From: Macrostomum lignano
Lineage: Eukaryota
DNA: 64,000 nucleotides
Assembly: GCA_002269645.1 (NCBI GenBank)
Contig: NIVC01000385.1
Location: 248,001-312,000 of the forward strand
Direction: 5' to 3'
Part shown: positions 10,499 to 30,339 of the stretch, one piece after another
Position numbering within the stretch: the stretch's first letter is position 1
How the letters are laid out: each line of letters starts with the position of its first letter
Made by a program: the position numbers and the translations under genes
The notes under the pieces: generated by a model
Databases searched by the model: none
Told to the model about the DNA's origin: nothing
What the model saw: the letters and a program-made list of their open reading frames with translations, nothing else

Positions 10499-11834
10499 TA
10501 GTAAATAACAGAATATAAAACAAATATTGTATAAATTTTTAGAGTTCAATACAATAGGCCTATGATGAGTTGTTCAATATGAGGTCTATAATTTGGAAAC
10601 ATATTTAAATTTGAATATTTGGATTTGGAATTTTTTTGTACATTTGGATTCAGTTTTGGAAACTTGCAAAAATCTATATTTGGTCTATCACTAGGGCCTA
10701 ATTGTAATCATTTATTTTATGATAAAAAAATGATTTTTTATTTTTAAACTATTGTCTTTATAGTATAAATACAAAATATAATTATAAATATAAATATAAT
10801 ATAATTTATATTATAAATTGCTTGTGAAGACGCAAAGTAAATATAGTTATTTATATTACTTAAATGTTCTACTAGAATTATAGTATATGTATCTAGTATC
10901 TGAATTGAATTGAACTTAGAATTGAACTTAATTCTTATTATTCTTATTATTATTCTATAATTCTTATTCTTATTTCCTATTTGAAACATTTGTGAGACAT
11001 TTAAAAAAGGATCCATCACTAATTGCAATGCAGCAATGCACATTGTACTTGATCTGCTAAGTAGTAAAGTTTATCATTTCTTTCAATTAGCATATATAAT
11101 AATTATATTCAATGTTACTCTGTATATTTTTTATAAAGCCTATCCTATAGTTGTGTAATAAAAGTTTCATTTTAATATTCTTTTTTTTTATATGCCAAGC
11201 TAGGCCTAAATAAGCCATAAGTGAAATTTTTGCTTTGTTCTTTTTTGAATCAAGGATCCAAGTAGGCCTATATTTAGGCTTAACTATATTTAATAACTAT
11301 ATTTACTTGAATCACAAAAAGCTTAGATTTTTTGTTTAGGCCTAACTCAAGCTCTAGTTGAGTAATAATACATTTTGAATAATGGGCTTTTTTACTTAAA
11401 GTTAAGCTTGAGTAATGTGTTATAGTTATTAGTTTAATGTACTAATTAAGCTAACATTGCAAAACCTTTAAACTGATTTAATAAATAATTGTAGTAGGTG
11501 CTTAAGTCAAGATGAATGCCTTTGAGTAATAATTATTCACAATCTTATGCAGTTTTTTTTCAAAATCTCAACACTATTCAGTTATTACCCAAAAGTGTTA
11601 TATCCATGTTTTAATGAGATGAAATGTGCCTTTTTGGGATCTATTGTCAAAATATTTGGGATTTATACAAATAGCTACATCAAAAAGTTTATAAGCTATT
11701 AACTTTTAATTTGTCCTACATATTTTTCATTTTTTCTAATGTTAGTTTATTAACAAGGAAATATGCAATGTCATATTTCAGAATTCTGCTTTGAACAAGA
11801 CACTCACATGCATTAAAACTGCAATAAAGGAACC

Positions 11835-12404
11835 ATGCTACAAAAAGAACAAAAGTCTCAAAGGAAAAGTACTAGCAGTTCCAGCAGCAGTGAAAGTGAC
11901 GGCGATGCCGAAGTAGATGATAAAATTCGCCAAGCAGCCCAGATTGATTATCTTCAACCAACTGCAAAACGCTCTGCAACTGATACTAATGTAATTGGCA
12001 AAGAAGTCACGGACACGGTTGCCATGGTAACAGATTATCGCAGCTTAAACCCGCCTGAGCTGTTCAGGCGTCGAATGCAAGAACGACTGGATGCTCTATG
12101 TGAGCAGCGACTTCGATTCCGGAGCGCGACAGAGCCGGCTTCAGGGGATGGTCTCCGGTCTGCTGTACGACCGGGTTCTCCCCCAGCGCTGCTTTCAGCT
12201 CGGACTCTTGACAGTCTGGTGCAGCCGCAGCCAGCTTCTGAGCAGCGGAAGGAGCAGAAGCAGCAACCGTCTAAGAAGAAGCCGCGTCTTCACACGGCCG
12301 AGCCGGAAGAGTTGAAATTGCTGGCCGTTAATCCGGCTGTACTTTTAGCTAACAGCGGAGTCGCCTGTCACAGATCTGGCGCTGCCTCCTCTGCTGAACG
12401 CTAG
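11835..12404 (+). CDS. CUSTOS: Protein CUSTOS (C12orf43)-like, single coding exon, 189 aa
   Basis: Intact ORF. SSSSSSESDGD..DDKIRQAA, LNPPELFRRRMQERLDALCE and EELKLLAVNPAVLLANS resemble my recollection of the CUSTOS blocks (SSSD..ERCREAA, TTPEFRAHVAKKLGALLD, REAAVSASDIL). AATAAA at about 12497. Confidence 0.6.
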   Translation: MLQKEQKSQRKSTSSSSSSESDGDAEVDDKIRQAAQIDYLQPTAKRSATDTNVIGKEVTDTVAMVTDYRSLNPPELFRRRMQERLDALCEQRLRFRSATEPASGDGLRSAVRPGSPPALLSARTLDSLVQPQPASEQRKEQKQQPSKKKPRLHTAEPEELKLLAVNPAVLLANSGVACHRSGAASSAER

Positions 12405-12649
12405 CGCTGCCTTAGTAGTAGTGTATATAGTAAATTTTGGCATTTTTGTTGCTTTCCAATACCTAGGTGTGGAGTTTTGTTAATCGGCATTTTCAAATAA
12501 ATGAAAAGCACTGTAAAACAATTTTGTATAGTTTAGAATTTTTTTAATCTAGGTTTTCTTGGAATTTTTTGTTTACCTGTAACTTTAATTATTTAGTTGG
12601 GTAGTCGAGTTTCAAACATGAATCCCATTGAAAATGTGAGGGCGGCAGC

Positions 12650-13779
12650 GATGCTCAATGGATGGATCGGGGAGGGGGCAGACGTGCTCAACGGAAGGAT
12701 CGGGGAGGGGGCGGAGGTGCTCAACGGAAGGATCGGGGAGGGGGCGGAGGTGCTCAATGGAAGGATCGGGGAGGGGGCAGAGGTGCTCAACGGAAGGATC
12801 GGGGAGGGGGCGGAGGTGCTCAATGGAAGGATCGGGGAGGGGGCAGAGGTGCTCAACGGAAGGATCGGGGAGGGGGCGGAGGTGCTCAATGGAAGGATCG
12901 GGGAGGGGCAGAGGTGCTCAATGGAAGGATCGGGGAGGGGGCAGAGGTGCTCAACGGAAGGATCGGGGAGGGGGCAGAGGTGCTCAATGGAAGGATCGGG
13001 GAGGGGGCAGAGGTGCTCAATGGAAGGATCGGGGAGGAGGCGGAGGTGCTCAACGGAAGGATCGGGGAGGGGGCGGAGGTGCTCAATGGAAGGATCGGGG
13101 AGGGGGCAGAGGTGCTCAACGGAAGGATCGGGGAGGGGGCGGAGGTGCTCAATGGAAGGATCGGGGAGGGGCAGAGGTGCTCAATGGAAGGATCGGGGAG
13201 GGGGCAGAGGTGCTCAACGGAAGGATCGGGGAGGGGGCAGAGGTGCTCAACGGAAGGATCGGGGAGGGGGCAGAGGTGCTCAATGGAAGGATCAGGGAGG
13301 GGGCGGAGGTGCTCAATGGAAGGATCGGGGAGGGGGCAGAGGTGCTCAATGGAAGGATCAGGGAGGGGGCGGAGGTGCTCAATGGAAGGATCGGGGAGGG
13401 GGCAGAGGTGCTTAATGGAAGGATCGGGGAGGGGGCAGAGGTGCTCAACGGAAGGATCGGGGAGGGGGCGGAGGTGCTCAATGGAAGGATCGGGGAGGGG
13501 GCAGAGGTGCTTAATGGAAGGATCGGGGAGGGGGCAGAGGTGCTCAACGGAAGGATCGGGGAGGGGGCGGAGGTGCTCAACGGAAGGATCGGGGAGGGGG
13601 CGGAGGTGCTCAATGGAAGGATCGGGGAGGGGGCAGAGGTGCTCAACGGAAGGATCGGGGAGGGGGCGGAGGTGCTCAATGGAAGGATCGGGGAGGGGGC
13701 GGAGGTGCTCAATGGAAGGATCGGGGAGGGGGCAGAGGTGCTCAATGGAAGGATCGGGGAGGGGGCAGAGGTGCTCAAC
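12650..13779. repeat. 33-bp G-rich minisatellite (gaggtgctcaatggaaggatcggggagggggca), about 34 units
   Basis: Direct tandem copies; occasional 1-nt G deletions explain the frame-hopping ORFs. Confidence 0.97.
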
Positions 13780-13882
13780 AGACTCATTTGCCGTATAGTT
13801 ACAGGAAGCTAGACAAATTCAAAGCTGCAGAAACAGCATCTGTATATGTATTTCTGAGATTTGCACTCCAAGAAGCTTCACA

Positions 13883-16800
13883 ATGGCATCAGCTGGTGGC
13901 GACCCTGCCGATTCAACAGACTTCACCGTGTCCTCGGCTGATCGCGAGCAATCTGACAGTGCCAACAGTTCGCCGAAACGTGCCGGTTCATCGGCGCCGC
14001 AAGGTCCTCTGGACCGGCGAACTCTGATGCACGAACTGCAGCTAGCCAAGATTCAACTGTCTCAGAGGACTGCCGAATTAGAGAGCCGTCAGGAGCAGTG
14101 GAATTCGCGCGAAGAGGACTTAGTTGATCGGCTGGGCTCGGCTGAACGAGAATGCGCTCAGCTACGCCAGCAGCTTGAGCACGAGTTGGCGGAGGCCAGG
14201 GCCGACACAAGGCGTCGAGAGGACCGCAGCCGGCGCGCTTTGGAGGAGGCGCTGGCCAGACAGAGACGGCTGGAGGAGGCCAATGCTCAGCTTGTTGGCT
14301 ATACTGGAGATCTTAAGCGGAGCTTACAGGTATCCTAAGATCCCGATCCCAAAATCCTAGGATCCGAACCCCAAAATCCCAGGATCTCGATCCCAAAATC
14401 CCGGTATCCCATTCCCAAAATCCTAGGATCCCAACTCCGCAATTCCGGGATCCTGATCCCGAAATCCCAGTATCTTGATTCCAAAATAATCCCATGATCC
14501 CGGGATCCCGATCCCAAAATCCCGAGATCCCGACCCCAAAATCCTAAGATCCCGATCCCAAAATCCTAGTTTCCCAACCCCAAAATACCGATCACAAAAT
14601 CCTGGGATCCCAACACCAAAATCCCGGGATCCCAACTCCAAAATCCCGGGATCCCAACTCCAAAATTCCGGGATCCTGATTCCAAAATCCTGAGATCCCG
14701 ATCCCAAAATCCTGAGATCCCGATCCCAAAATACGAGATCCCGACCCCAAAATCCCGGGATCCCAACCCCGAAATCCCAGGATCCCGATCCCAAAATACG
14801 AGATCCCGACCCTAAAGTCCCGGGATCCCAACCCCTGAATTCCAGGATCTCGATCCCAACATCCTGAGATCCCGCCCCTAAAGTCCCGAAATACCTAGGA
14901 TCGGTTAGACAGGATCGGGACTCCAATCCCAACTCCCAACTATCCAATCTCTGGCAAGCATATCTAGCTACCTCTGGACCTGCCGGTTTCCATTAATTCA
15001 GGGCAGTCTCAGCATCCCGGATGACCGAGCCCGTCATCTGCAGTCGCTTCAAGAGGACGAGCTGAGCGTACGCGACCTGGTCTGCCTTCGACTGCACCAG
15101 CAGCTGCAGCCGCTTCGTCAACAGCTTGAAGAAACTGGCGAGCGAGCCAAAGTGGCCACCGAGGAGCGGGACAGGCTGTACGATGAGGCTGACAAACTGC
15201 GCGACTGCCTGGCTGGAGAACGGCGCCTGCATCAGGCCCTGCAGGAGTCTTACCAGAAGGTATTGTATGCAATCTGCAGTATTTGTTCTGTATAATCGCT
15301 CAGAATAAATATATTCCTTCTGATTGGCTGAATTTGACGTGACCCTAGCTAAATGAGTGCGTTTTCTTGAGACATGAGCGCCAATACGCGCTTGTGCCGG
15401 TGCGCATCTCTGTCAATGCGCGCTCGTGCCAGAGCCGCAAAAGTTACACTCAAATCCCTAATTTTTGCAGGCAGTATCAGAGCTAGCCGATGTGCGCTCC
15501 CAGGTGCATTCAGGCAATTACAAGGTGGCCCATTTCGACGAGGTGAAACACGATCGCGACCGGCTTAGCAGTCAGTGCGAGCAGCTGCAATCCGCTCTGT
15601 CAGCGTTGGAACAGCAGGTGGCCTCGGTTGCTAAGGAACGAGATCAGCTAGCCAGGGATTTGGCCAGTTCGCAGCAGACCGTTCAACTGTTAAGACAGGA
15701 TACTACTTATCTTAGTAATCAGGTTGGTTATCAAGGTTTTTTGTATTGCGTAGCTTATTTAGTAGATTGTGTCTGAACAGGCTACTTATAGTAGAAATAG
15801 TAGGTGACATCTCTTCTTTTCCTATTTTCCTATTTCCTCTTTTCCTAAGTCACTTTTTTCCTATTTTACCTGTGGTACCTGCAGGGCGCTTCTTGGCTTA
15901 TAGGGTATCTTTTTTTCGGGATGGTATTCAGTTTATTATATAGCAAGATGTATTGCCACTGCCACCCATCTGTAGATCGGCGAGCTGTCCAGCCGGGCGG
16001 CCCATGCCGAGGATCGCTGCGCCGGCCTTCAGAAACAGCTGGACGACGCCCGGGCCGCTAGAGAGGCCGCCATCGAGCGAAGCCTAGCAGAACGGGATCG
16101 ACTTCGCGGCGAATTCGAACTCCGACTGCACAGCGAGTTGGATAGGCTGAGGACTGGGGGCGAAGCTGAGCTGGACCGCCTGAGGCGGCAGACTCTGGAC
16201 ATGCAGGAGGCGCAGGTGGGGCTTAAGGTGTTACTGAGGATAGTATGAGTAGATTCTGATTGGGATTAATCCCAGATTGCACACAGGTGATCACTGATAT
16301 GAGTAGATTCTGATTGGGATTAATCCCAGATTGCACACAGGTGATCACTGATATGAGTAGATTCTGATTGGAATTAATCCCAGATTGCACACAGGTGATC
16401 ACTGATATGAGTAGATTCTGATTGGAATTAATCCCAGATTGCACACAGGTGATCACTGATATGAGTAGATTCTGATTGGGATTAATTCCAGATTACACAC
16501 AGGTGATCACTGATATGAGTAGATTCTGATTGGGATTAGTCCCAGATTGCACACAGGTGATCACTGATATGAGTAGATTCTGATTGGAATTAATCCCAGA
16601 TTGCACACAGGTGATCACTGATATGAGTAGATTCTGATTGTGAATAATCCCAGATTGCACACAGGTGATCACTGATAAGAGTAGATTCTGATTGGGATTA
16701 ATCCAACATTTGCACACAGGTGATCACTGATATGAGTAGATTCTGATTGGAATTAATCCCAGATTGTACACAGGTGATCACTGATATGAGTAGATTCTGA

Positions 16801-19800
16801 TTGGAATTAATCCCAGATTGCACACAGGTGATCACTGATATGAGTAGATACTGTTTGTAAATAATCCCAGATTGCACACAGGTGATCACTGATATGAGTA
16901 GATTCTGATTGGAATTAATCCCAGATTGCACACAGGTGATCACTGATATGAGTAGATTCTGATTGGGATTAATCCCAGATTGCACACAGGTGATCACTGA
17001 TATGAGTAGATTCTGATTGGGATTAATCCCAGATTACACACAGGTGATCACTGATATGAGTAGATTCTGATTGGAATTAATCCCAGATTGCACACAGGTG
17101 ATCACTGATATGAGTAGATTCTGATTGTGAATAATCCCAGATTGCACACAGGTGATCACTGATATGAGTAGATTCTGATTGGGACTAGTCCCAGATTACA
17201 CACAGGTGATCACTGATATGAGTAGATTCTGATTGGGATTAATCCCAGATTGCACACAGGTGATCACTGATATGAGTAGATTCTGATTGGAATTAATCCC
17301 AGATTGCACACAGGTGATCACTGATATGAGTAGATTCTGATTGGGATTAATCCCAGATTGCACACAGGTGATCACTGATATGAGTAGATTCTGATTGGGA
17401 TTAATCCCAGATTACACACAGGTGATCACTGATATGAGTAGATTCTGATTGGAATTAATCCCAGATTGCACACAGGTGATCACTGATATGAGTAGATTCT
17501 GATTGTGAATAATCCCAGATTGCACACAGGTGATCACTGATATGAGTAGATTCTGATTGGGACTAGTCCCAGATTACACACAGGTGATCACTGATATGAG
17601 TAGATTCTGATTGGGAATAATCCCAGATTACACACAAGGGATAATAATTTGAGTGGATTTTAAACCTCCAAATTGTTACCTCCGCACAGGTGAAGGCAAT
17701 GAGAGAACAGCGAGACCAGGCCGTGCTGGAGCGCGAGTCGGCCGTGGCCCGCCTAGACGATGCCGAAACCGTCTCCGGGATGCCAGGGAGCAGCTGGCTC
17801 GTGCAGCGGCCGCCGCCGACAAGCGCACTACAGAGCTCACAGCAGAGCTGCGAGTGCGCGAGTTTGAACAGGCGAGTCAGCAATTGAACCTGTTGGTCAG
17901 GTCAAAGGAAGGGGGTTCAGGAAAAAATAGCGGCGTCAGCGATAAAAGACCACCTTAAAAGTATAACAATGTTATTCTCGCAACCGAAACATTCAGGATC
18001 GAGCTACTCTGCTACTAAAAGAAGCCAACGCCAAGCTAGAAGAGGCTGCACTGGAGCAGGAGCGGCTGCGAGCCAAGCTACAATCAGCTGAGCAGGAATT
18101 CGCTAAGCTAGAGCAGGCCTCCAGGCGGCACCAGCTGGATCAGCAGGCTAAAATAGATCAGCTGACAGCTAGTCTGGAAGCGTACGAGTCGGCTGAACGA
18201 GAGCTGGATCAGGCTGTGCTGCAAGCAGCCGAGATTGGCAAGCCTGGCGATGATGGCTGCAGTCCGGACCAGGTTTGAGTTATTTGTTATGCTGAGCGGG
18301 TCTGTTTACTGTGTCTGGGATTCCCCTGTGACTGGGATTCCCCTGTGACTGGGATTCCCCTGTGACTGGGATTCCCCTGTGACTGGGATTCCCCTGTGAC
18401 TGAGATTCCCCTGTGACTGGGATTCCCCTTGATTGGGATTCCCCTGTGACAGGATTCCCCTGTGACTGAGATTCCCCTTGATTGGGATTCCCCTGTGACT
18501 GGGATTCCCCTGTGACTGGGATTCCCCCTTGATTGCGATTCCCCTTGATTGGGATTCCCCTTGATTAGGATTCCCCTGTGACTGGGATTCCCCTTGATTG
18601 CGATTCCCCTTGATTGGGATTCCCCTTGATTAGGATTCCCCTGTGACTGGGATTCCACCGTCACTGGAATTCCGCTAAATAGAAGTAATAGCCTGTCCAA
18701 ATTGTTTGTATCCACCGCAGATTATCGCCGCAGGCGTTGCCATGCCAACTACAGCCAGACGGCGACTCCGGCAATCCGTAGAGCTGGCCAAGCGAGTGCT
18801 GCAGCTGGAGCGGCAGTCAGTTGAGCTCAACACCGCTCTGGAGAAGCAGCGCAGCGAGGCTGCCAGATACAAGCGCGAATTTGAACGGCTAGAGGCCACG
18901 CTGTCGGATGCTGAGCAGCCCTACGGCTATTTGGTTGACTCGATTCGGGCTCGCGATGCCGAATTGGAGAAGACTAGGTAAAGGAGATTTTGATTACCTA
19001 ATACCTTGAATCCATGACACTAAGATTTTGAGCAAACAAAAATCAAAGTACAAGCTGTACTTGCTCGTTTAGCAGAGTAAAAAAGTAGATTATTAATTAA
19101 TAATCATAGAGATTAGTAGTGGGAATTAATCGCATTCGCTTAGATAGACTTCAAGTTAAGCTGAATTGGCTTCGGTTAGTACCACTCTTTAAGGCACCAC
19201 TCACGAATCTGTAACCAACTCAGCTGGAACTCAGCTCAGCTCTTAGATCAGCCCAATGAAAATGGTACCCCAGGCCAAGAAGCGCCCCAGAATCACTTGC
19301 GCCCCCCCCCAGAGTCGTTTCAGTATAGTCGACTCTAAACCAACGAGATGTTGCGGTAAAAGTCACCAAAAAGTTGTCAAAAAGTCGCCCAAGAGACTAT
19401 TCGAGTCGTTTAGTGTCTACGACTCTGGGGCCGTAGAATCGTATCTGAGGCGTGCCAGAGACGCTGTAGAATCACTGAGTTGCGTCTAAAGTGCATTTGC
19501 ATCAGTTTATGAATTTGAATCACATTTCGCATTTATAACAACTCTATTTAGTCTACTTGAGAGTCAGCAGAAAGTTAAGCGCTAGCAGAATGACTCTTGG
19601 ACAATTTTTTAGCGATTCGTTTACGATTCTGCAACTCAGTGATGCCCTCGGTGACTCAACAGTCAGTCATTACAGTTACAGCATTAACGTTTGAGTCGTT
19701 AAAAAGTCAAAAGAGTCGCCTAACAGTCGCTAGAGACTCTTCTGGTCACAATAACGCTTTCAACGGGCAGTCCAGTCAAAAGAAGATCGAACGACCAGCA

Positions 19801-20198
19801 TCCGCTGGAGTGTCTATCAAACTGAAGACGCCTGGCACAGTTTCTATGCTAACCCTAACACACTAGTAGTAATAACTTCTACTAAAAGCAGCCAAATTCA
19901 AATCCTGTACAGGCAGCAGCTGTCTGAGGCGGAGGCCCGACTTGAGTCGCTAGCGGTCGATCGGAACCGGCTAGCTGAGGCCAAGAATCGAATGTCGGCA
20001 GATCTGGAACGCCTGTTAGCCCAGCGCGACGAGGTGGCGATGCTGCGAAAGACCGTCGCCGCTATGCAGTCCAAGCGCGTCGGGTCCGGTCGGGTGGCGG
20101 CATCGCGGCCGAGGATCGAGCCTCGCGCTCCCGATTTCGAATTCGAGGATCAGGATGAGCTGAAGCCGAGCCAGCCGTATGCGCTGCACTATTCGTGA
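13883..20198 (+). CDS. PIBF1: Progesterone-induced blocking factor 1 (PIBF1/CEP90) orthologue, 8 exons; apparent 1-nt frameshift in exon 5 and likely GC-AG intron 5
   Basis: Exons 13883-14329, 15002-15259, 15471-15722, 15976-16215, 17690-17871, 17997-18272, 18721-18977 and 19913-20198. Motifs [63 protein letters not shown] and MSADLERLLAQRDE match PIBF1 as I recall it ([36 protein letters not shown]). Confidence 0.92.
14335..14940. repeat. Degenerate 21-22-bp minisatellite (gatcccgatcccaaaatcct..) in PIBF1 intron 1
   Basis: Tandem units start within about 5 nt of the donor at 14330. Confidence 0.92.
16240..17635. repeat. 54-bp minisatellite (gatcactgatatgagtagattctgattgggattaatcccagattgcacacaggt), about 26 units, in PIBF1 intron 4
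   Basis: Highly homogeneous tandem copies; the consensus unit holds the palindrome tgggattaatccca. Confidence 0.97.
18315..18660. repeat. 17-bp minisatellite (ctgggattcccctgtga and variants) in PIBF1 intron 6
   Basis: Direct tandem copies. Confidence 0.93.
19252..19767. mobile_element. CCC...GGG-ended non-autonomous DNA element (CMC/EnSpm-like MITE), copy 1, in PIBF1 intron 7
   Basis: Ends cccaatgaaaatggtacc and taacgctttcaacggg are imperfect inverted repeats, flanked by cag on both sides (3-bp TSD candidate). Body is rich in gactc/gagtcg motifs shared with copies 2 and 3. Confidence 0.65.
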
Positions 20199-21614
20199 CC
20201 TGAGTTTATCATCATCTGTTTTTAGTTAGTTATTATAAAAAGCCTCATTTAGCAGAGTCTGTTAATAGTGATAGCAATAATTGCGGATGGGCTGTTGGGC
20301 GCTAAGCGATATCGTCTCATAACCAGCTAGCGGGAAGGCAGTCCTGTCCATTCCGCTGACCTTTGAACAGTCATACACGCGCTCACGCAGGGTGTACAGC
20401 AACCTATTGTACGTGTATAAAGCGCACACTGCACACAGGCCCCAAAATGAATGTGTTAGAAATCAGGATTGATTCTTAGAAATGAAGCCAAATTACGTAA
20501 CAGCATTAAACTGAATAATCTGAAAGTGGTCGCTGTCCAAACTCATTCAACACATTTAGATTGGGCGTATTATTAGTACTATAAGTAATATTTTGTTTTC
20601 CGATTTATTCATGCCAACCGAATTATTGCATAAACAAGACCGTACTGTGTACGGCGCAGAGCGCAAGATGTTTATAATTCCGTATTGTTTGATATGATAC
20701 AAAATTGACTCAGAATTTTCTCTTTTTTTATTGAACTTTTGTGTAGTTACTTGTATATCAACTCTCCAGCTGCGCTGTGAAATTGCCTGTGTACATCACC
20801 ACATTTGCGTGTAATTTGACTAGGTAATGAGTACTTTTAACAAACTATACTTTTTAAAGTATATACAGCACTCCTATGGTATGAAGTTCTATGATGTACT
20901 TGCGGTTTTTCAATAAATTACATATAGTGCTTTACTAAAGTACATACAGTACTTTCAAAAAGTACACCCTGTATTTTTTAAAGTACATAATGTGCTTTTA
21001 TACAGTACACAGTGTACTTTTTTAAAGTACACAGTGTACTTTTATGAAAGGTTCTCTGAAGTACTGGTTTAGTACAAGTAGTACTTCCATAATAAAGTGC
21101 AGTTCTTCCAGAAAATACCTAAAGAAGTGTCACAAAGTTTATAAAATACTTCTGTAAGTTTTATACGGTTACTATGCTGAAATTTACAGTGGATTCTCAG
21201 GTCCACAAGTGTGATCCACAAGCTATAAAATAGAACATCAGTTAATTTCATAATCGTCAGTAAAATTAATTGGCTGTGTAAAAATGATTTTACATTATAG
21301 CACAATTTTATTTGACGGAATTTTCCTAAGCAAGTTCAAATATTCCGTCCTTCCAAAATGTTATGAGCAGCCAGTAGATGTGCGTATTAGTTTTTTCATA
21401 AACGACATTCCTTACATCACAGACAATTAATGTGTATTAATTAATTGTATTTTTTGCGCAAGTCGCGTCTAAGTTAGCCAAATTTAAATTAAAATGCGTT
21501 TGCTTTAATATTTAAATACTAAATATACTAGACATTCCTGAGTTTGTGTACACTTTTGTTTTATTGGGCAAGTGTTTTTTTCATTCAGTTCATTCAGATG
21601 AACTGAATTCATTC

Positions 21615-22340
21615 AGGTCAGTCAGCTGGGATCTTCACTCTCCTATGTCAGTCAGCTGGGATCTCCAATCTCCTAGATCAGTCAGCTGGGATCTCCACTC
21701 TCCTATGTCAGTCAGCTGGGATCTCCAATCTCCTAGATCAGTCAGCTGGGATCTCCACTCTCCTAGATCAGTCAGCTGGGATCTCCAATCTCCCAGGTCA
21801 GTCAGCTGGGGTCTCCACTCTCTCAGATCAGTCAGCTGGGATCTCCACTCTCCTAGGTCAGTCAGCTGGGATCTCCACTCTCCTAGATCAGTCAGCTGGG
21901 ATCTCCAATCTCCCAGGTCAGTCAGCTGGGGTCTCCACTCTCTCAGATCAGTCAGCTGGGATCTCCACTCTCCTAGGTCAGTCAGCTGGGATCTCCACTC
22001 TCCCAGATCAGTCAGCTGGGATCTCCACTCTCCTAGGTCAGTCAGCTGGGATCTCCACTCTCCCAGATCAGTCAGCTGGGATCTCCACTCTCTCAGATCA
22101 GTCAGCTGGGATCTCCACTCTCCCAGATCAGTCAGCTGGGATCTCCACTCTCCCAGATCAGTCAGCTGGGATCTCCACTCTCCTAGGTCAGTCAGCTGGG
22201 ATCTCCACTCTCCCAGATCAGTCAGCTGGGATCTCCACTCTCCCAGGTCAGTCAGCTGGGATCTCCACTCTCCCAAATCAGTTTAGCTAGGATCTCTCAG
22301 ATCAGTTCAGCTGGGATCTCCACTCTCCCAGGTCAATCAG
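21615..22340. repeat. 30-bp minisatellite (tcagtcagctgggatctccactctcctaga), about 23 units, between PIBF1 and BORCS7
   Basis: Direct tandem copies; source of the SVSWDLHSPR ORF. Confidence 0.96.
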
Positions 22341-22410
22341 CTTAGATATCCCAAATCAAGCATTTTAAAGCATCACTTTGATTAACCTCAATTGAACACA
22401 AGCAGCTGAA

Positions 22411-23375
22411 ATGTTTGACACTGGCAACAATGTTGCATGCATGTCGGGCTCATCAACTGCCCAGCAGTCGTCGCCTAGCAACCAGAAACAACAACAAAAG
22501 CAGCAGCAACAATCCAAACCCAGCGACACATTCAATCGCGAAGCAAAAGATCGGCTTTGCCAACGAACGCAGACATTTCTAGAGGAGTTGAACTCCTTGA
22601 CGCGCAGTTTGTTAAAGAACTCGCGTTCCTCCGAACTTCTGTTGCAGAGCGCTAAAAGTACAGCGGCGTTAGAGACTACAGTGCTGCAAACCTCTGCTAC
22701 GCTGAACAGAGTGGCCCTGGTGACATCTAATTTGGCACTGCAGACTGAGGCTATTGGTAGCGACTTGGCTGTGCTTGACGAGATCAACGATCAGGTTGTG
22801 GCTGTTAGCAGGTAATTGTGTTGTCGAATATTACTTGTTTAGGGGCCGAGTGTTTTTGGTTTGTGCCTAAAGCACTGTCATGTTAAAAACATCATTGCTA
22901 ACAACCCACTAGTGACTCTAGCGACTCTCCAAGCGACTCTTGTGACTTTTTAACGACTCAAACGACTGCAATGCGACAGAGAGGCGACTGTTGTGCACGA
23001 GCGCATCATGCAAGTTGTAGAATCTCGTCCAGGAGTCATGTTAACGTGCCTAACTTTCTAGTAACTCACGTAGACTAAATAGAGTTGCTAGAGATACCAA
23101 GGGCTTTAGATGCAACGCAACTCTGAATCGCTCTAAAGTCGCAGACAGTACAATCGCTTCAAATTGACTCTTAGGCGACTCTTTGACGAATTTAATGACT
23201 ACTTGTACCGTGACATCTCGTTGTTTTAAAGTCGTCTAGAGTCACCTATTTCCTATTTTACCTGTGTTAGCTGCAACAAATCTCAAACGACCCTGGGGCG
23301 ATGCAGGTGACTGGGACGCTTCTTGGCCTGAGATGCCGTTTTCACAGTTCAAATCCTTACAAGAAAAACCTATAG
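22411..23375 (+). CDS. BORCS7: BLOC-1-related complex subunit 7 (BORCS7/C10orf32)
   Basis: ORF 22411-22815 contains LTRSLLKNSRSSELLLQSAK and LNRVALVTSNLALQTEAI, matching BORCS7 as I recall it (LTKQVLKGSRSSELLGQAAR, LRKMAIITTHLQYQQEAI). The C-terminus is ambiguous: unspliced stop at 22815, or splicing from CAG|GT at 22795 (or 22812) to an acceptor at 23270. The 22795 route gives DQ|LQQIS with TAG at 23373-23375. Confidence 0.82.
22905..23260. mobile_element. Truncated copy 2 of the CMC/EnSpm-like MITE family
   Basis: Shares gcgactcttgtgactttttaacgactcaaacgactg and ctaaatagagttg with 23885-24540. Confidence 0.6.
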
Positions 23376-23423
23376 AATTTGAATTATTATTGTTAACTCT
23401 TTAAACATCGTCGCAGGTAAACT

Positions 23424-24746
23424 ATGAGCGGCAAACGGCCCAATATTCTGGTCACCGGCACACCTGGCACAGGTAAATCCACCCTGTGCCAGGAGCTGGC
23501 TAACCGGCTGGCCAGTGTCACGCACGTATGCGTTGGCGAAGTGGCCAAGGCTAATGATTACTTCGACGGCTGGGACGAGGCCACGCAGTGCCACTTTCTA
23601 GACGAGGACCGGCTGCTAGACGACCTGGAAGAGCGACTAGCTGACGGTGGCTGCGTTGTTGATTATCACAGCGCCGAGCTGTTCCCCGAGCGCTGGTTCC
23701 AGGCTGTGTTTGTACTGCGGACAGAGAACTCGCTGCTCTATCAGCGACTGAAGGCGAGGAACTATGCCGAGGCGAAGGTGCAGCAGAATGTGCAGTGCGA
23801 GATTTTCCAGGTTAGTTATTATTAAAGTTTTTGTTAAATAGGTTGGTGTACGATTGGCGATTCGTGTCTTGCTTGTTGAGTCTTCCCGTTGAAAATGTTA
23901 CCGTGACCAGAATCGCTAGAGTCATAGCAGAGTCACTTGGGTGACTCTTGTGACTTTTTTAACAATTCAAACGACTGTAATGCGACTAAGAGGTTTTTGA
24001 GTCGCGAGCGCATCAATTGAGTTGCAGAATCTTAAGAAAGCTAAATAGAGTTGTCAAAAATGCGAAATGCAATTCAAATTCATAAAGTGACGCAGATGTG
24101 CTTTAGACGCAACTCAGTGATTCTACAGCGACTGGCACGTCTCAGTTACGACATTTAGAGAAATTTAAGATCGACTACGAATGCTAAATAAGAATTGTAA
24201 ACCGGCTAAATTTAAGAGCCAATCAGAAGGCGGCAAGGGAGAGAAAGTAAGAAATAATAAGACTGAACTGGACGGAGAAGAAGAGAAAACAGAGTAGACA
24301 GAGACGAGTGCAGATGAACTGAAGAAAACACTAGGAAGTCGCCACACGACTCTACGTCCCCAGAGTCGTTTCAGAGTTGCAGAAAAGACGCCTCAAATGA
24401 ACTCTTAGACGACTCTTTAACGACTTGTGGCTAATTGTGTCGTGGCGTCACGTCATTTTTGAGTCGTCTAAAGTCACTTTTTTCCTATTTTACAAGTGAC
24501 TCTGTGACGCTTTAAGACCTTAGGTACCGTTTTCATCAGGCTGCTTGCGGATATTTGCTTGTTGAGCCTTAGCTTTTTGAGGCTTGCCCAACTTCAACTT
24601 CAACACCATTGCAGACACTCCTAGAGGAAGCTCGCGAGTCCTACAAGCCTGAGATTGTGCACGAGCTGCAGAGCAATGGACCCGACGATCTGGAGGCTAA
24701 CATTGCTCTTATACAGGATTGGCTAGCTAAGAATGGCGGCCTCTGA
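23424..24746 (+). CDS. AK6: Adenylate kinase isoenzyme 6 (CINAP/Fap7), 2 exons
   Basis: Exons 23424-23810 and 24615-24746 (TGA), phase 0 GT-AG. PNILVTGTPGTGKST P-loop, VDYH motif, FPERWF, and NVQCEIFQ|TLLEEARESY..IVHELQSN. Confidence 0.96.
23885..24540. mobile_element. Copy 3 of the CMC/EnSpm-like MITE family, in the AK6 intron, opposite orientation to copy 1
   Basis: cccgttgaaaatgttacc / ggtaccgttttcatcagg is a 14/18 inverted repeat. Internal blocks are reverse complements of 19252-19767 (for example gactgagttgcgtctaaag vs ctttagacgcaactcagtga). Confidence 0.65.
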
Positions 24747-25093
24747 AAAATCACTAATTAATCACTAATTCATCCTTCCCTCTTTAAAATTCTGTAAACT
24801 TTTTCTATTTGAATGGACAATTTTAGCAAGTACGCATGCATTTGATTGTGTGAAATCTTGAACCTACACTGCGCAAGGTTTATGGTAAAAAATACAATAT
24901 GCACTACTGTTTGCAGTAGTACTGTTTGTTTTTTGGTATCTGGAAAGCAGGGGTTGCGTTTATTTTATTTTATTTTCTATATTTAAATTTGAGAAACAAA
25001 ACTCTCAACTTGCCTACTTCTGTTGTGTCATGACAGTAGTATTAATCAGTTTATTTCTTGTTCGTTTTATGATATTCGCATAAGAACGCAACA

Positions 25094-27503
25094 ATGCCGC
25101 GAAATCAAAGCAAACCGGGAGCTGATATTGATGAGGCCGATGCAGCTGAGTCCCCAGTGCCCAGCGAAGATCAGCAGGAAGGTGACGAGCCCGGCTCAGC
25201 CAATGCCAACTCTGATGACAGCGATGACAGCAAAGCAGAAGCAGATGAGGAATCGGGAGAGGCCGATGAGGACAGCGACAACAGCGGTGGCAACGACGAC
25301 GACTCTGACAGCGACGGGGCGGCGACTCCCCCGCCGACGCTGGCCGCAACCCGAGAACGCCGGGCCAAAGCGGGCAGCCGGATGGCTCGCCTGTTGAACG
25401 AGCTGGACGGCGGCGGGGCCAGCGTGCACCAGCAACTGCGTCGTGCCACTCCGCATGGCGACGAAGCCGGAGGTGGCAGCAGCGGCGGGGGTGGCGACGA
25501 TTTCTACGAAACTGTTTATGGCGGCTTCGCCGAGACTGCCAGCGACGCCGACTACGAGGAGGAGAGCTCTGAGTCCGACCAGGTTGACTCCGACTTCGAC
25601 ATCGGCGAGGGCGGAGCTGGCGGCGGCGGCGGCGGCGGGGAAGGCGATGACGACGAAGGCAGCGACGGCGACGATGACGAGGAGTCGACGCGTCGGCGCG
25701 GCGGTCAGCGACGCCGGCTGGTGACGAAGGCCTACAAGGAGCCGGTCCGGCCGACTGCTGCTGCCGGGCCGCCGCCGGCGAAGCGCGGCCGCAAATCGGC
25801 AGCAGCCAACGCCGCCGCCGCCGCTGCTTCGTCAGACGCGAACTCAACGCGAGCCACCCGTCGAGGAGCTGCCGCCGCTGCTGCTGGGCTGAAACTGACA
25901 GCCACCGCCGCTCGTGAACGTCGGTCTCGCGAGGCCCGCGCCTCCGCCGTGGCATCCGTCGCCGCCACCGCCGCCGCTGCCACGGCTGGCCGACGGCCTC
26001 GCCAGTCGACGTCGTCTACGGCCGGCCAAGGCCCAGGCAGGCGAAGATCGGCCGCTTCGAATGCGGCCAACGCTGTGCGCCGCCTGACACAGGAGGAGCT
26101 GCTGGCAGAGGCGCAGCTGACTGAGCAGGTCAACTTGCGCTCGCTGGCGCGCTACCAACGGCTCGAGGTGGAGAAAAAGAAGGCCCGGTCCAGGCAACCG
26201 GTTGCTAGGGGCCCAACTGTTCGATTTGACTCTTATACTACCCGGCTGCTCGACGAGGATGTTGTGCCAGTTGAGGTGAGTATGCGTGAGTTAAGAATCT
26301 AAATTTCTCTAATTTCTCTAATTTCATGAGAGAAAAATCATGAATACCAGATGACTCCCGAAGGTAAACTTTTGCATCTGCTCCCTGTCACTATTACCAT
26401 GTGGTTAGTCAGAGGCACACTTCTTTTCCACCGGCAGATTTTTCCAATCGATAGCAGCAGGCATACTGCTGTGATTTTATTAAGCTAATTAAAAATTTAT
26501 GACTAAGTTATAGGCTCGCCTATTATCTTATCTTATTGTCGGTTCAACTGTCCCTCGCTGATGTACACCAATGTACATCATACTCACTGCCCAAGTGACC
26601 GATCAGTTCACCCACCCCGTCCCCCCATCTCTCGTCCAATCAAATCAATTTTACAAGTGTGAAATAATGGGCGCTCAAAAGCTGTATAGTAGGAGTATGT
26701 TGCGGAGTTGAATAATGGCCAAAACACGAATGCGTGTACAATCTCCATTGTGCCAGAACGGCACGAGTGGCATCACCAGCAAGCAGACTGTGTCGTCTAG
26801 AAGTTAATTGTCAATTGTCCGTTGGTATTTTTACAGCTTCCGTCCTGCTAGGTTAAGGTAGATTTCAATAACGTCTGTCTTGACAAACTTGGTTGGAACA
26901 CTTGTAGAGATCACGCATTTTGTGGATCATTGTCTAAGTCTCTAAGATAACTGAAACAACAGCTCGAACTGCAGAATACTGTTTTAAAACAACAGATCCT
27001 TGATTTTTTAATGCAGAAGTTAACGTTAGCGATGGTCCTTTATGGCTTGTTAAAAACTATTTGGGCTATCAGGTGTTTATTTGAGCTTTGTTTTTGTGCA
27101 CTCCGACCTCCATTTAAGTTGTAAAGCTTAACCATCAGCTTTATTTAATCCCTCGCAGGTCACTGAGGTGAACACAGACACGGGAGACACCGCTCCGAAG
27201 CCAACCCTGGTACTAGAGCCTGACAATGCACCAAACCGTAGGTGCACCAGAAACTTCGTGTCCTTCACGCACCAGGAGACGCTGGCTGCCGGCCTGTCTC
27301 TGAACCGCCGGCCGCCAATGCGGAATCCGTTCTGTCCCATCAGCAACCAGCCCGCTCGCTACTTTGACCCGCTAACGCAGACTCCCTATAGAGACGCCAG
27401 GTCGTTCCGCGTGCTGCGCACTCTGTACGCTATGCACCACGCCACAGGCATTCGACCGGCTGTACTGCTCAAGCAGTACACCCAGGGAGAGCTTATTGTT
27501 TAA
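25094..27503 (+). CDS. VPS72: Vacuolar protein sorting 72 / YL1 (H2A.Z chaperone, SWR1/SRCAP), 2 exons
   Basis: Exons 25094-26275 and 27159-27503, phase 0. RERRAKAGSRMARLL, DQVDSDFDIGE, RLVTKAYKEP, LTQEELLAEAQLTEQVNLRSL and the YL1_C motif CPISNQPARYFDPLTQTPY. Confidence 0.94.
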
Positions 27504-28551
27504 CGCGGTAACTGCATTTTCTAATACGCTCGTATGGTGGTGCTACTGTAACCTTTTTAATAATACAATGCTTGTAATTAATTCTTTCTAAATATACCAA
27601 TTTAAAAACTGCAGCACAATGGTGACGTTTGTTATTAATATAATAATTACCTATTCCAGTTGAAATTATGTGCCTTGTTGTGTCTTTTCTTATTAAAAGT
27701 TAAAAACGCCAAAACATTTTTCACCATCAGGACAGGATTAATAGCAAATGGCAAAATATATAAATAACCATGTGCAGTATTTTATTTTCGTTAATATTAA
27801 ACGAATATATCGTCCTTTAGAAGACGAGCGTTTGACCGCGAGAAATAACAGGAATAAATTGAGGAGACAGAAAGTCGCAGGAAATGCACAATGGGAGAGG
27901 GGTGAATTTACAGACGGGTAATTATTTTGGCAGCTGCATGCAGCCAGAGATCCGGGGCATACAACAATGAAAGCACTTCTGCTTCTTCGTTAAGATAAAA
28001 CTGAATAATATATAATCAGCTGGATAAAATACAATAGCTAAGCTTAAAAGAATTACTTACAGCAAAATTAATAGATATTTATGTATTACATTAGCCCCTA
28101 CGAGAACAAGAAATATTCAATTTTAAGGAAAGATATCCAAGAATGAATATAGATTTTCAGGTAGATAAGCATAGGTCAGATACTAGATTTATTATCTAGA
28201 GCACAAACTAAAAGTTGTGAAAATGTAGAACTTCGACTCTGTTTTCAGTAGTTATTCTGCGCAGTGTCACCTAAATTTAATTTGGCATTAAAAATTTCAG
28301 TTCCTCTGGGGTTTGCGCGGCCTTATAAGCATATTTAAAATGAACAACAATAATTATTTAAACATCGATGTACACAACATCGAACGCTCTGCTTTCAGCA
28401 AGATAAAGAAGGGCGCCACACCTTCCCTCTCTTGCTCGCTTTGCGCACTCACTGGATTTGAGAGCCTCAAACAGGATGAGAATGCTAACTTAGAAAAGAA
28501 ATTTAGATAGAAAAAAAAACGCTAAAAAGCTGCAAGGTTGGCTACTAAGCC

Positions 28552-30252: not shown

Positions 30253-30339
30253 CTGAAAGCGGAAATGACTGACAGGTATTCATTCTGAGTCTGGGATTCT
30301 TGACCTGCCTTTCATAGTATGTACAAGAGCTACCATGTT

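What the first reader, a model, noticed from the sequence alone, without database searches (positions are those of the whole stretch)
11770..27503. Five co-oriented housekeeping genes (CUSTOS-PIBF1-BORCS7-AK6-VPS72) that look like a trans-spliced operon
Seen: five functionally unrelated conserved genes on one strand. Each has an AG acceptor-like site shortly before the ATG: tatttcag 11781/ATG 11835; ctccaag 13872/13883; cacaagcag 22402-22405/22411; gtcgcag 23416/23424; cgcataag 25084/25094. AK6 to VPS72 is 347 nt. CUSTOS to PIBF1 is about 350 nt after removing the 33-bp array. A very AT-rich kilobase lies only ahead of the first gene. PIBF1 to BORCS7 stays about 1.5 kb and is the weak link. 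Known: flatworms use SL trans-splicing and some have operons. Inference: a polycistronic unit resolved by SL addition.
Basis: partly seen in the sequence, partly recalled or inferred. Interest (0 to 1): 0.7.

Follow-up and report, generated by a model that had tools for sequence, protein, structure and literature searches.

The report
Flatworm spliced-leader operon gene cluster
Five same-strand genes in the flatworm Macrostomum lignano, a species already known to build operons resolved by spliced-leader trans-splicing; BORCS7 and AK6 are linked on one RNA in two close relatives, but a single five-gene operon is not shown, so this is an ordinary example of a known phenomenon.

Summary
The window is Macrostomum lignano assembly Mlig_3_7, scaffold NIVC01000385.1. 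SL trans-splicing (about 30% of genes) and operons (about 15%) are already published for this species.

The five co-oriented genes and the stated distances are real. BORCS7, AK6 and VPS72/YL1 are confirmed. PIBF1 is only a lead. 'CUSTOS' is unsupported: the 189-aa product is an orphan.

There is positive evidence for trans-splicing:
- RNA contigs from two close relatives start with the M. lignano SL joined 1 nt before the BORCS7 ATG. They run through a 16-31 nt spacer into intron-free AK6.
- The annotated 5' ends of PIBF1 and VPS72 sit directly after TTTCAG-type acceptors.
- The RNA-seq-polished assembly carries SL-like bases written over exactly these acceptors.

By the published criteria, g1-PIBF1 and BORCS7-AK6-VPS72 pass on distance. 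PIBF1-to-BORCS7 is about 1.4 kb after removing tandem arrays and stays unresolved.

This is a new member of a known kind and of low interest. One side lead is that BORCS7-AK6 may persist as a stable dicistronic mRNA.

The parts
11776..11781 (+).
   Evidence: It matches the published trans-splice motif [T/C]TNCAG, but such a motif occurs within 55 nt of 18% of random positions. It is identical in the paralogous copy. There is no RNA evidence, so its status is unknown.
   Evidence: It is annotated at NCBI as a hypothetical protein in two copies. It has no Pfam hit and no homologue among 1.84e9 representatives. AATAAA lies at 12496.
12638..13778 (+). 33-bp tandem array (34.6 copies) in the g1-PIBF1 spacer
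   Evidence: TRF. Copy number differs between paralogous copies. Without the array the spacer from the g1 stop to the PIBF1 exon start is about 311 nt.
13854..13856 (+). PIBF1 acceptor: CTG in this copy, TTTCAG in paralogue L006; the exon starts at 13857
   Evidence: The NCBI 5'-partial CDS starts at 13859 in an upstream-open frame, in two copies. An older chimeric model, P0130, has an exon starting at 13859, 2 nt downstream after the next AG. The only mismatch in 104 nt between the copies is this A>T, which matches the SL base.
13883..20198 (+). PIBF1-like coiled-coil gene with 8 exons: 13883-14329, 15002-15259, 15471-15722, 15976-16215, 17690-17871, 17997-18272, 18721-18977, 19913-20198
   Evidence: Splice model and translation. 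It agrees with P0123 and P0129. A 1-nt deletion near 17766 breaks the frame in this copy. Intron 17872-17996 is GC-AG.
20199..22439 (+). PIBF1-BORCS7 spacer (2241 nt): the weak link
   Evidence: It holds arrays at 20912-21050 and 21614-22342 and four AATAAA/ATTAAA hexamers. GC of the non-array part is 0.34. It has no gene. About 1373 nt remain after removing the arrays.
22433..22439 (+). TTGCATG, identical to the last 7 nt of the SL, directly before C-ATG of BORCS7; inferred SL junction at 22439|22440
   Evidence: Two relatives show SL|CATGTC at the homologous point. Older ML2 models read V-S-S-M here, and P0132 has an exon starting at C-ATG-TCG, so an AG is expected at this spot. The assembly was polished with RNA-seq.
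22441..22815 (+).
   Evidence: Pfam PF16088. The Met at 22441 aligns with the start used in L002 and L005. There is no further ATG in any frame. The start context is weak, gcatgcATGt.
22816..23416 (+). BORCS7-AK6 spacer (601 nt); 22916-23344 is an interspersed repeat
   Evidence: Repeat copies also lie at 23943-24493 (+) and 19735-19257 (-). About 172 nt are left without the repeat. The relatives have 16 and 31 nt here. There is no AATAAA or ATTAAA. An 8-nt direct repeat GCAGGTAA sits at both ends.
23414..23416 (+). CAG 7 nt before the AK6 ATG: an acceptor for cis or trans splicing, use unknown
   Evidence: A CAG lies 4-7 nt before the AK6 ATG in three M. lignano copies and in both relatives, although the flanks have diverged. 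No SL-like bases are seen here in any copy.
23424..24746 (+). AK6 CDS, exons 23424-23810 and 24614-24746 (172 aa)
   Evidence: Translation. It is 98% identical to BOX15_Mlig028478g5. The intron is absent from the RNA contigs.
25069..25071 (+). VPS72 acceptor: ATG in this copy, TTTTCAG in paralogues L006 and L001; the exon starts at 25072
   Evidence: In L006 the CDS starts one base after the CAG, in a frame that stays open upstream, so it marks the transcript's 5' end. In this window both changed bases (C>A, A>T) equal the last bases of the SL.
25094..27503 (+). VPS72/YL1 CDS, exons 25094-26275 and 27159-27503 (508 aa)
   Evidence: Pfam YL1 (E=2.3e-32) and YL1_C. Model. The next genes downstream are on the minus strand.

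Best explanation
This is a cluster of spliced-leader trans-spliced genes in Macrostomum lignano, organised as operon units of the kind already described for this species.

Proposed mechanism. RNA polymerase II makes a precursor that spans neighbouring genes. The single 35-nt SL is joined to a CAG acceptor 1-26 nt before the start codon: PIBF1 exon start 13857, BORCS7 22440, VPS72 25072. This gives each downstream mRNA its cap.

Shown:
- SL on BORCS7 in two close relatives.
- BORCS7 and AK6 on one intron-spliced RNA in those two relatives.

Inferred:
- SL on PIBF1, BORCS7 and VPS72 in M. lignano itself.
- g1-PIBF1 and BORCS7-AK6-VPS72 as operon units.

Unresolved:
- Whether the two units are one five-gene transcript driven from the AT-rich region before g1.
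- Whether AK6 gets its own SL or is translated from the dicistronic RNA.
For: - Species and background. The scaffold is identified. The SL sequence, the acceptor motif [T/C]TNCAG, and the figures of 30% of genes trans-spliced and 15% in operons (up to nine genes; repeat-adjusted spacing under 1 kb, mode about 100 bp) come from PMC8629364. PMC5730564 reports about 7% of assembled transcripts as multi-gene precursors.
- Direct RNA evidence. L002 (SRR30276804) and L005 (SRR28338163) begin with 26 and 22 nt identical to the SL 3' end. Then come C-ATG of BORCS7, a stop, 31 or 16 nt, and AK6 with its intron removed.
- Annotated 5' ends. The 5'-partial CDSs of PIBF1 (two copies) and of VPS72 (copy L006) start in frames that are open upstream, right after TTTCAG or TTTTCAG.
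- SL-like bases in the assembly. Mlig_3_7 was Pilon-polished with RNA-seq. At positions -3 and -2 of the PIBF1, VPS72 and Utp11 acceptors one copy has CAG and another has CTG or ATG. All four changes match the SL base. BORCS7 carries TTGCATG in all three copies.
- Distances without repeats. About 311 nt (g1-PIBF1), about 172 nt (BORCS7-AK6) and 325 nt (AK6-VPS72).
- Older gene models. They fuse g1+PIBF1 (P0130), BORCS7+AK6+VPS72 (P0121, P0122) and PIBF1 C-terminus+BORCS7+AK6+VPS72 (P0132). PMC12582326 treats such chimeras as a signature of flatworm operons.
Against: - No M. lignano RNA reads could be examined, so SL use in this species rests on annotation boundaries and on an inferred polishing artefact.
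- The two RNA contigs come from unnamed relatives and show only local continuity of short reads.
- No SL is seen at AK6 in the contigs, and no SL-like bases at AK6 or g1 in any copy.
- PIBF1 to BORCS7 is 2241 nt, or about 1373 nt after removing tandem arrays. That exceeds the published 1-kb limit unless the PIBF1 3' UTR is longer than about 370 nt. The spacer holds four poly(A)-signal hexamers and could hold a promoter.
- About 60% of trans-spliced M. lignano genes are not in operons, so an SL alone does not prove operon membership.
- The chimeric models may be ab initio artefacts.
- Five genes on one strand has a chance probability of about 6%.
Confidence: 0.7

Rival explanations
1. One reading: one five-gene operon. 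A single promoter in the AT-rich region before g1 drives one precursor through g1, PIBF1, BORCS7, AK6 and VPS72, and SL addition resolves it.
For: All five genes are co-oriented with no intervening gene. The lowest GC (0.24) lies before g1. BORCS7 is SL trans-spliced, which operon-internal genes need. One older chimeric model, P0132, joins the PIBF1 C-terminus to BORCS7 exactly at the BORCS7 acceptor. Published M. lignano operons reach nine genes and often contain repeat-inflated spacers. If the PIBF1 poly(A) site follows the AATAAA at 20912, the repeat-adjusted gap falls to about 0.65 kb.
Against: Nothing examined here spans PIBF1 to BORCS7. Both relatives' contigs start with the SL at BORCS7 rather than with upstream sequence. 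Measured from the stop codon, the spacer is about 1.4 kb after removing arrays. Its non-array part is also AT-rich (GC 0.34). P0132 may be an ab initio join.
Confidence: 0.35
2. BORCS7-AK6 is not resolved by the SL. It persists as a stable SL-capped dicistronic mRNA, and AK6 is translated by leaky scanning or reinitiation. In M. lignano the 605-nt repeat-bearing spacer (22812-23416) would be removed as an ordinary intron, leaving UAA-ACU-AUG.
For: - In both relatives the assembled RNA runs SL-BORCS7-AK6 with the AK6 intron removed, and the contig does not extend upstream of BORCS7.
- No ATG occurs in any frame between the BORCS7 and AK6 start codons in three species.
- BORCS7 is the only one of the five genes with a weak start context, U at -3 and U at +4.
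- There are no SL-like bases at the AK6 acceptor in three copies, whereas BORCS7 has them in all three.
- BORCS7 has no protein record at NCBI in any of the three copies, although AK6 does in two. This fits one transcript with only its longest ORF annotated.
- CAG|GTAA occurs at both ends of the spacer, so splicing would restore the stop codon.
Against: The lack of ATGs is not significant once the amino-acid sequence is held fixed (P=0.30-0.66). It is only P=0.02-0.03 on base composition, and 0.23 for L002. A conserved CAG 4-7 nt before the AK6 ATG looks like a working SL acceptor. De Bruijn assemblers clip a short SL branch, so a contig cannot exclude SL-AK6 mRNAs. Reinitiation after a 124-codon ORF is normally inefficient (own knowledge). 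Unspliced, the M. lignano spacer holds 8 ATGs.
Confidence: 0.3
3. There is no operon. Each gene has its own promoter and outron, the SL is added to monocistronic transcripts, and the same-strand order is chance or a legacy of duplication.
For: Most trans-spliced M. lignano genes are not in operons. Five same-strand genes arise by chance about 6% of the time. Spacers of 300-2200 nt could hold promoters. Conservation among the three assembly copies says nothing, because introns are equally conserved.
Against: The 16- and 31-nt BORCS7-AK6 spacers in the relatives leave no room for a promoter, and RNA reads cross them. Three of the four spacers fall under the published operon distance once repeats are removed. 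Older models fuse the genes.
Confidence: 0.08

Closest known systems
Macrostomum lignano operons and multi-gene transcriptional units (Wudarski et al. 2017, PMC5730564; Ustyantsev & Berezikov 2021, PMC8629364)
   Same: Same species and same single 35-nt SL. Genes are on one strand, acceptors are of TTTCAG type, spacers are inflated by tandem and interspersed repeats, and the members are mostly conserved genes with unrelated functions. Three of the four junctions are under 1 kb after removing repeats.
   Different: This locus is not individually described in the papers I could read. The PIBF1-BORCS7 gap exceeds the 1-kb rule when measured from the stop codon. One member (g1) is an orphan. SL use at AK6 and g1 is not shown.
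C. elegans SL2-type operons (as summarised in PMC12582326)
   Same: A polycistronic precursor, about 100-nt to a few hundred-nt spacers, and downstream genes capped by trans-splicing.
   Different: M. lignano has one SL and no specialised SL2. The spacers here carry kilobase-scale repeat arrays.
C. elegans SL1-type operons and Ciona operons without intercistronic sequence
   Same: The BORCS7-AK6 junction in the relatives is only 16-31 nt and has no AAUAAA. Upstream 3'-end formation and downstream trans-splicing would therefore have to share or compete for one site.
   Different: No poly(A) site abutting the acceptor is shown. In M. lignano the same junction is 601 nt long.
Trematode cytochrome b-c1 subunit 7 (UbCRBP)-enolase operon and chimeric operon gene models in parasitic flatworms (PMC12582326)
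   Same: A flatworm gene pair kept together across species with the SL on the downstream gene. Operon genes are fused into chimeric models by annotation pipelines, as with P0121, P0122, P0130 and P0132 here.
   Different: Different genes and a free-living lineage. Conservation here is shown only for BORCS7-AK6 and only within close relatives.
Eukaryotic dicistronic mRNAs translated by leaky scanning or reinitiation (own knowledge, for example Drosophila stoned)
   Same: Two unrelated ORFs on one processed RNA, an upstream ORF free of internal AUGs, and a weak upstream start context.
   Different: Translation of AK6 from the dicistronic RNA is untested. The AUG depletion is statistically weak. 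An SL acceptor sits just before AK6.

Membership tests
M. lignano SL-resolved operon (criteria of PMC8629364) | Adjacent genes on the same strand with no opposite-strand gene between them | tested here: met
   The NCBI gene lists for this scaffold and for a paralogous copy show only + strand genes from ODAD1 to VPS72. The spacer ORFs are repeat translations. There are no tRNA or Rfam hits.
M. lignano SL-resolved operon (criteria of PMC8629364) | Downstream gene is SL trans-spliced: BORCS7 | tested here: met
   The SL 3' end is joined to C-ATG of BORCS7 in RNA contigs of two relatives. In M. lignano the assembly reads TTGCATG|CATG at the same point, and older models imply an AG there. The M. 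lignano part is inference.
M. lignano SL-resolved operon (criteria of PMC8629364) | Downstream gene is SL trans-spliced: PIBF1 and VPS72 | tested here: inconclusive
   The evidence is indirect. The annotated 5' ends fall right after TTTCAG or TTTTCAG in upstream-open frames. The differences between copies at -3/-2 all match SL bases. No reads were seen.
M. lignano SL-resolved operon (criteria of PMC8629364) | Downstream gene is SL trans-spliced: AK6 | tested here: inconclusive
   A conserved CAG lies 4-7 nt before the ATG. Both RNA contigs run through it from BORCS7, and no copy carries SL-like bases there.
M. lignano SL-resolved operon (criteria of PMC8629364) | Repeat-adjusted intergenic distance under 1 kb: g1-PIBF1, BORCS7-AK6, AK6-VPS72 | tested here: met
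   About 311, 172 and 325 nt, measured from stop codon to inferred exon start after removing arrays and the interspersed repeat.
M. lignano SL-resolved operon (criteria of PMC8629364) | Repeat-adjusted intergenic distance under 1 kb: PIBF1-BORCS7 | tested here: inconclusive
   2241 nt, or about 1373 nt after removing the two arrays. It would pass only if the PIBF1 3' UTR is longer than about 370 nt. Candidate signals lie at 20505, 20912, 21091 and 21488. No RepeatMasker library was available.
M. lignano SL-resolved operon (criteria of PMC8629364) | RNA spanning adjacent genes (polycistronic precursor) | tested here: inconclusive
   Met for BORCS7-AK6 in two relatives. For the other three junctions there are only chimeric gene models.
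M. lignano SL-resolved operon (criteria of PMC8629364) | Single promoter or transcription start site upstream of the first gene only | not testable with these tools
   This needs CAGE or 5'-cap data, or reporter assays. Only base composition is available.
C. elegans SL2-type operon | A specialised second SL used for downstream genes | not tested
   The literature reports a single SL in M. lignano. Both contigs carry that same SL. There is no SL RNA gene in the window.
BORCS7 / YL1 (VPS72) / AK6 protein families | Match above the curated Pfam threshold, or named homologues | tested here: met
   PF16088 scores 67 bits (cut-off 27). PF05764 scores 113 bits and PF08265 40 bits. PF13238 scores 109 bits, and homologues named AK6 reach E=1e-63.
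CUSTOS | Detectable sequence similarity to any CUSTOS or other protein | tested here: not met
   No Pfam family at E<=10. phmmer against 1.84e9 representatives finds only the protein itself.
PIBF1 (CEP90) | Sequence similarity to PIBF1 orthologues | tested here: inconclusive
   No Pfam or PDB match. UniRef names it only as a coiled-coil protein.

The most novel reading that the evidence does not exclude
BORCS7 and AK6 form a dicistronic mRNA conserved among M. lignano and close relatives. It is SL-capped at BORCS7, has a weak BORCS7 start codon, has no AUG before the AK6 start, and the two ORFs are only 3-31 nt apart. AK6 would be translated from the same mRNA by leaky scanning or reinitiation rather than after SL resolution. 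In M. lignano a repeat-bearing 605-nt insertion between the ORFs would be removed as a new intron whose splice sites (CAG|GTAA at both ends) restore the stop codon.
Probability: 0.3. Interest if true: 0.5.

Novelty: new member of a known kind. Interest (0 to 1): 0.25.

Why it matters
For the question asked, it matters little. Operons resolved by one spliced leader are already catalogued genome-wide in M. lignano, and this locus is one more case, with one junction still open.

Two by-products may be useful:
- Reference quality. The Mlig_3_7 reference seems to carry SL-derived bases written over trans-splice acceptors (CAG read as CTG, ATG or GCATG), probably from polishing with RNA-seq. That would blur acceptor-motif statistics, mislead splice-site or transgene design, and create false differences between gene copies. 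It would also mark trans-splice sites in the assembly itself.
- BORCS7-AK6. This pair, kept 16-31 nt apart in two relatives and seen as one SL-capped spliced RNA, is a compact test case. It could show whether flatworm operon pairs with almost no spacer are resolved or are translated as dicistronic mRNAs.

Tried and rejected
- SL or SL RNA gene in the window: no match with up to 3 mismatches. No Rfam family or tRNA anywhere in the 64 kb.
- Exact look-ups of the window's BORCS7, AK6 and VPS72 products, and of the relatives' BORCS7 products: not on record. My first VPS72 look-up also had a typing error (YFHK instead of YSHK); the corrected one failed too.
They returned only M. lignano entries and missed even g1 itself.
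- AK6 hit P0003 (L003): an unrelated AT-rich organism with no BORCS7 upstream.
- Gene-name suffixes g1, g2, g5: these number gene copies, not positions in a transcription unit, so they say nothing about operons.
- 'SL fossil from retroposition' at BORCS7: beyond the 7-mer, similarity to the SL is no better than the window background (score 14 against 21-22 elsewhere; 7-mer count 3 against 3.9 expected). The polishing artefact explains the 7-mer better.
- Spacer as a transposon with a target-site duplication: the 8-nt repeat GCAGGTAA is one of several 8-mers in 680 nt. There are no terminal inverted repeats, and the recognisable repeat covers only 22916-23344. Not supported as such.
- Constraint on spacers from copy-to-copy identity: uninformative. 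The left half of the locus is about 99% identical everywhere and the right half 91-95%.
- ATG depletion in BORCS7: weak.
- CAG/CTG differences between copies also occur at three unrelated places (4449, 29813, 37456), so a single such change is not diagnostic on its own.
- Accession and gene-identifier searches in the literature: nothing found.

Full report
**Source.** AK6 from the window is 98% identical to a Macrostomum lignano protein. Fetching the contig that encodes the PIBF1-like protein P0124 gave locus L004, which is scaffold NIVC01000385.1 of assembly GCA_002269645.1 (Mlig_3_7). L004 is base-for-base identical to window 3859-28018. Two further copies of the locus exist in the same assembly: L006 (NIVC01001967.1) and L001 (NIVC01004158.1). 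They are collinear and 91-99% identical.

M. lignano is a free-living flatworm with one 35-nt spliced leader, CGGTCTCTTACTGCGAAGACTCAATTTATTGCATG. About 30% of its genes are trans-spliced. About 15% are assigned to operons of two to nine genes. The operon rule is same strand, downstream gene trans-spliced, and repeat-adjusted spacing under 1 kb, with a mode near 100 bp. The acceptor motif is [T/C]TNCAG (PMC8629364). The genome paper reports that about 7% of assembled transcripts are multi-gene precursors (PMC5730564).

**The observation.** The five + strand genes and their start codons are as stated. Pfam confirms BORCS7 and YL1/VPS72, and AK6 is confirmed by Pfam plus named homologues. The PIBF1 label could not be tested properly.

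The 'CUSTOS' label fails. The 189-aa product has no Pfam match at E<=10. It has no relative at E<=0.001 among 1.84 billion representative proteins.

The stated spacings and the AT-rich kilobase before g1 are correct. A sixth + strand gene, ODAD1-like, ends near 4886, which is 6.9 kb upstream. After VPS72 the genes are on the minus strand.

**The AG sites.** An AG close to an ATG is not evidence. It is found within 10 nt of 53% of random positions here and within 55 nt of 95%. Every upstream region holds 5-13 AGs. Better evidence moves three of the five sites, as described below.

**Direct RNA evidence from relatives.** The AK6 search found two Logan RNA-seq contigs from unnamed runs.
- L002 (SRR30276804) has AK6 at 75% amino-acid identity.
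- L005 (SRR28338163) falls in the same 90% cluster as M. lignano AK6. Its nucleotide identity to the window is 86% for AK6 and 78% for BORCS7.

Both contigs start with 26 or 22 nt identical to the 3' end of the M. lignano SL. Next comes C-ATG of BORCS7, the BORCS7 ORF and a stop. A spacer of 31 or 16 nt follows, and then AK6 with its intron removed.

This shows three things in close relatives. BORCS7 receives the SL 1 nt before its start codon. RNA molecules cross from BORCS7 into AK6. The gap leaves no room for a promoter.

**Annotation boundaries.** The deposited PIBF1 proteins of two copies are 5'-partial and begin ICTPRSFT-M, at window 13859 and L006 10001. The frame stays open for at least 20 codons upstream, so the CDS start marks the transcript's 5' end. 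In L006 the preceding bases are TATTTCAG|AG. In the window they are TATTTCTG|AG.

The VPS72 CDS of L006 likewise begins one base after TTTTCAG, in a frame open for nine more codons. The published pipeline cut transcripts at SL-read peaks. Ends falling exactly at CAG acceptors fit trans-splice sites. An older, independent model (P0130) has an exon starting at window 13859, 2 nt downstream of that acceptor.

**SL-like bases in the assembly (inference).** Mlig_3_7 was polished with Pilon using RNA-seq as well as DNA reads. At the very acceptors just described, copies differ only at positions -3 and -2, and always toward the SL's last bases (...GCATG):
- PIBF1 reads CAG in L006 and CTG in the window. 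This is the only mismatch in 104 nt.
- VPS72 reads CAG in L006 and L001 and ATG in the window.
- The minus-strand Utp11 gene reads ATATTTCAG in the window and TTTCTG in L001.

At BORCS7 all three copies read TTGCATG|CATGTCGG, which is the SL's last 7 nt. The older ML2-based models read V-S-S-M there instead of V-A-C-M. One of them (P0132) has an exon starting at C-ATG-TCG, which requires an AG at that spot.

I read these as SL-bearing reads having overwritten the acceptor during polishing. If that is right, it is M. lignano-specific evidence for SL junctions at 13856|13857, 22439|22440 and 25071|25072. A caution applies: the same CAG/CTG difference occurs at three unrelated places. The argument therefore rests on position and direction taken together. 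No such marks are seen at the g1 or AK6 acceptors in any copy.

**Junction by junction.**

| Junction | Raw spacer | After removing repeats | Other evidence | Status |
|---|---|---|---|---|
| g1 to PIBF1 | 1452 nt | 311 nt (33-bp array removed) | AATAAA 92 nt after the g1 stop; PIBF1 probably trans-spliced | Meets the published rule |
| PIBF1 to BORCS7 | 2241 nt | about 1373 nt (two arrays removed) | four poly(A)-signal hexamers; GC 0.34 | Passes only if the PIBF1 3' UTR is long; nothing spans it except chimeric model P0132 |
| BORCS7 to AK6 | 601 nt | about 172 nt (interspersed repeat at 22916-23344 removed; two more copies lie in nearby introns) | linkage on one RNA shown in relatives | Meets the rule on distance |
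| AK6 to VPS72 | 325 nt | 325 nt | no repeats and no canonical poly(A) hexamer; VPS72 probably trans-spliced | Meets the rule |

Older gene models fuse g1+PIBF1, BORCS7+AK6+VPS72 and PIBF1 C-terminus+BORCS7+AK6+VPS72. A 2025 survey treats such chimeras as a mark of flatworm operons. They can also be ab initio artefacts, however.

**Most likely mechanism.** Precursors spanning neighbouring genes are made. The single SL is then joined at CAG acceptors 1-26 nt before the start codons. The units g1-PIBF1 and BORCS7-AK6-VPS72 are probable operons of the known M. lignano type. I put the chance that they form one five-gene transcript at about one in three.

**The BORCS7-AK6 pair.** In both relatives the assembled RNA keeps the two ORFs together while the SL marks its 5' end. 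Several further points bear on this:
- There is no ATG in any frame between the two start codons in three species. For M. lignano this holds only if 22812-23416 is spliced out, because the unspliced spacer has eight.
- BORCS7 alone among the five genes has a weak start context.
- BORCS7 has no NCBI protein in any copy although AK6 does.
- CAG|GTAA stands at both ends of the spacer, so splicing would keep the stop codon.

These points suggest a stable dicistronic mRNA. Against this, the ATG depletion is weak. It gives P=0.02-0.03 on composition and 0.30-0.66 given the protein sequence. A conserved CAG sits 4-7 nt before the AK6 ATG. Short-read assemblers also clip SL branches. I rate this reading at 0.3.

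**Comparison with known systems and novelty.** The locus matches published M. lignano operons in species, SL, motif, repeat-inflated spacers and unrelated conserved members. It differs from C. elegans SL2 operons in having no specialised SL. The very short BORCS7-AK6 spacer in the relatives recalls SL1-type and Ciona operons. It is a new member of a known kind and would surprise no specialist. The two side observations, the assembly artefact at acceptors and the possible dicistronic pair, are the only parts with some wider use.

**Limits.** No M. lignano reads, cap data or poly(A) data could be examined. Two of the three homology searches were wasted on concatenated queries that hit a candidate cap. 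Transcripts of g1, PIBF1 and VPS72 from relatives were therefore not obtained.

Noticed in passing
window 13855; 22433-22439; 25069-25070; 33986 (minus strand); compared with L006 and L001: Bases just before trans-splice acceptors differ between assembly copies, always toward the SL 3' end (CAG read as CTG, ATG or GCATG). This is probably an artefact of polishing Mlig_3_7 with RNA-seq. It would erase AG acceptors in the reference and blur acceptor-motif statistics.
   Followed up: partly
window about 17766 (PIBF1 exon 5): A 1-nt deletion in an A run (GAAAAC read as GAAAC) shifts the frame, and the NCBI protein of this copy is truncated at 474 aa. Copy L006 reads AENRLRDAR here but has its own frameshift near the C-terminus. 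These are probably long-read indel errors, though real decay of duplicate copies is possible.
   Followed up: partly
window 17872-17996: PIBF1 intron 5 has a GC donor (CAG|GCGAGT) with a normal AG acceptor. The joined frame agrees with the deposited protein P0129.
   Followed up: partly
window 22916-23344 (+), 23943-24493 (+), 19735-19257 (-), fragment 15848-15883: An interspersed repeat family of about 430-550 nt, rich in GACTC motifs, lies in the BORCS7-AK6 spacer, the AK6 intron and PIBF1 intron 7. No clear terminal inverted repeats were found.
   Followed up: partly
window 22808-22815 and 23413-23420: An 8-nt direct repeat GCAGGTAA overlaps the BORCS7 stop codon and recurs just before the AK6 ATG. 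Splicing between the two copies would leave ...AGG TAA ACT ATG. This could be chance, because other 8-mers repeat in the same 680 nt.
   Followed up: partly
window 22444-22815; L005 27-420; L002 31-436: No ATG occurs in any frame between the BORCS7 start and the AK6 start in three species, and the BORCS7 start context is weak (U at -3, U at +4). Statistically this is weak once the protein sequence is held fixed.
   Followed up: yes
window 33985-33993 and 30252-30260 (minus strand): The minus-strand Utp11 gene and the neighbouring 369-aa gene each have a TTTCAG acceptor, 17 and 23 nt before their ATGs. They are probably SL trans-spliced too and lie tail-to-tail with the cluster studied here.
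   Followed up: partly
window 7119-22815 versus 23101-29000, compared with L006: Copy-to-copy identity is about 99% (introns and spacers included) left of AK6, but only 89-96% in non-coding DNA from the BORCS7-AK6 spacer (95%) rightwards. This suggests gene conversion or a mosaic history of the duplicated region.
   Followed up: no
window 397-4886 (+); 800-3000; 6487-7255: An ODAD1-like ciliary coiled-coil gene ends near 4886. Its introns hold long CTGT-type arrays, with AT skew down to -0.9. A (GTCA)x192 microsatellite lies in the 6.9-kb gap before g1.
   Followed up: no
window 14332-14888, 16244-17636, 18309-18673: PIBF1 introns 1, 4 and 6 are almost filled by tandem arrays of 22/44-bp, 54-bp x 25.8 and 17-bp x 21.9 units. 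Copy numbers differ between the paralogous copies.
   Followed up: no
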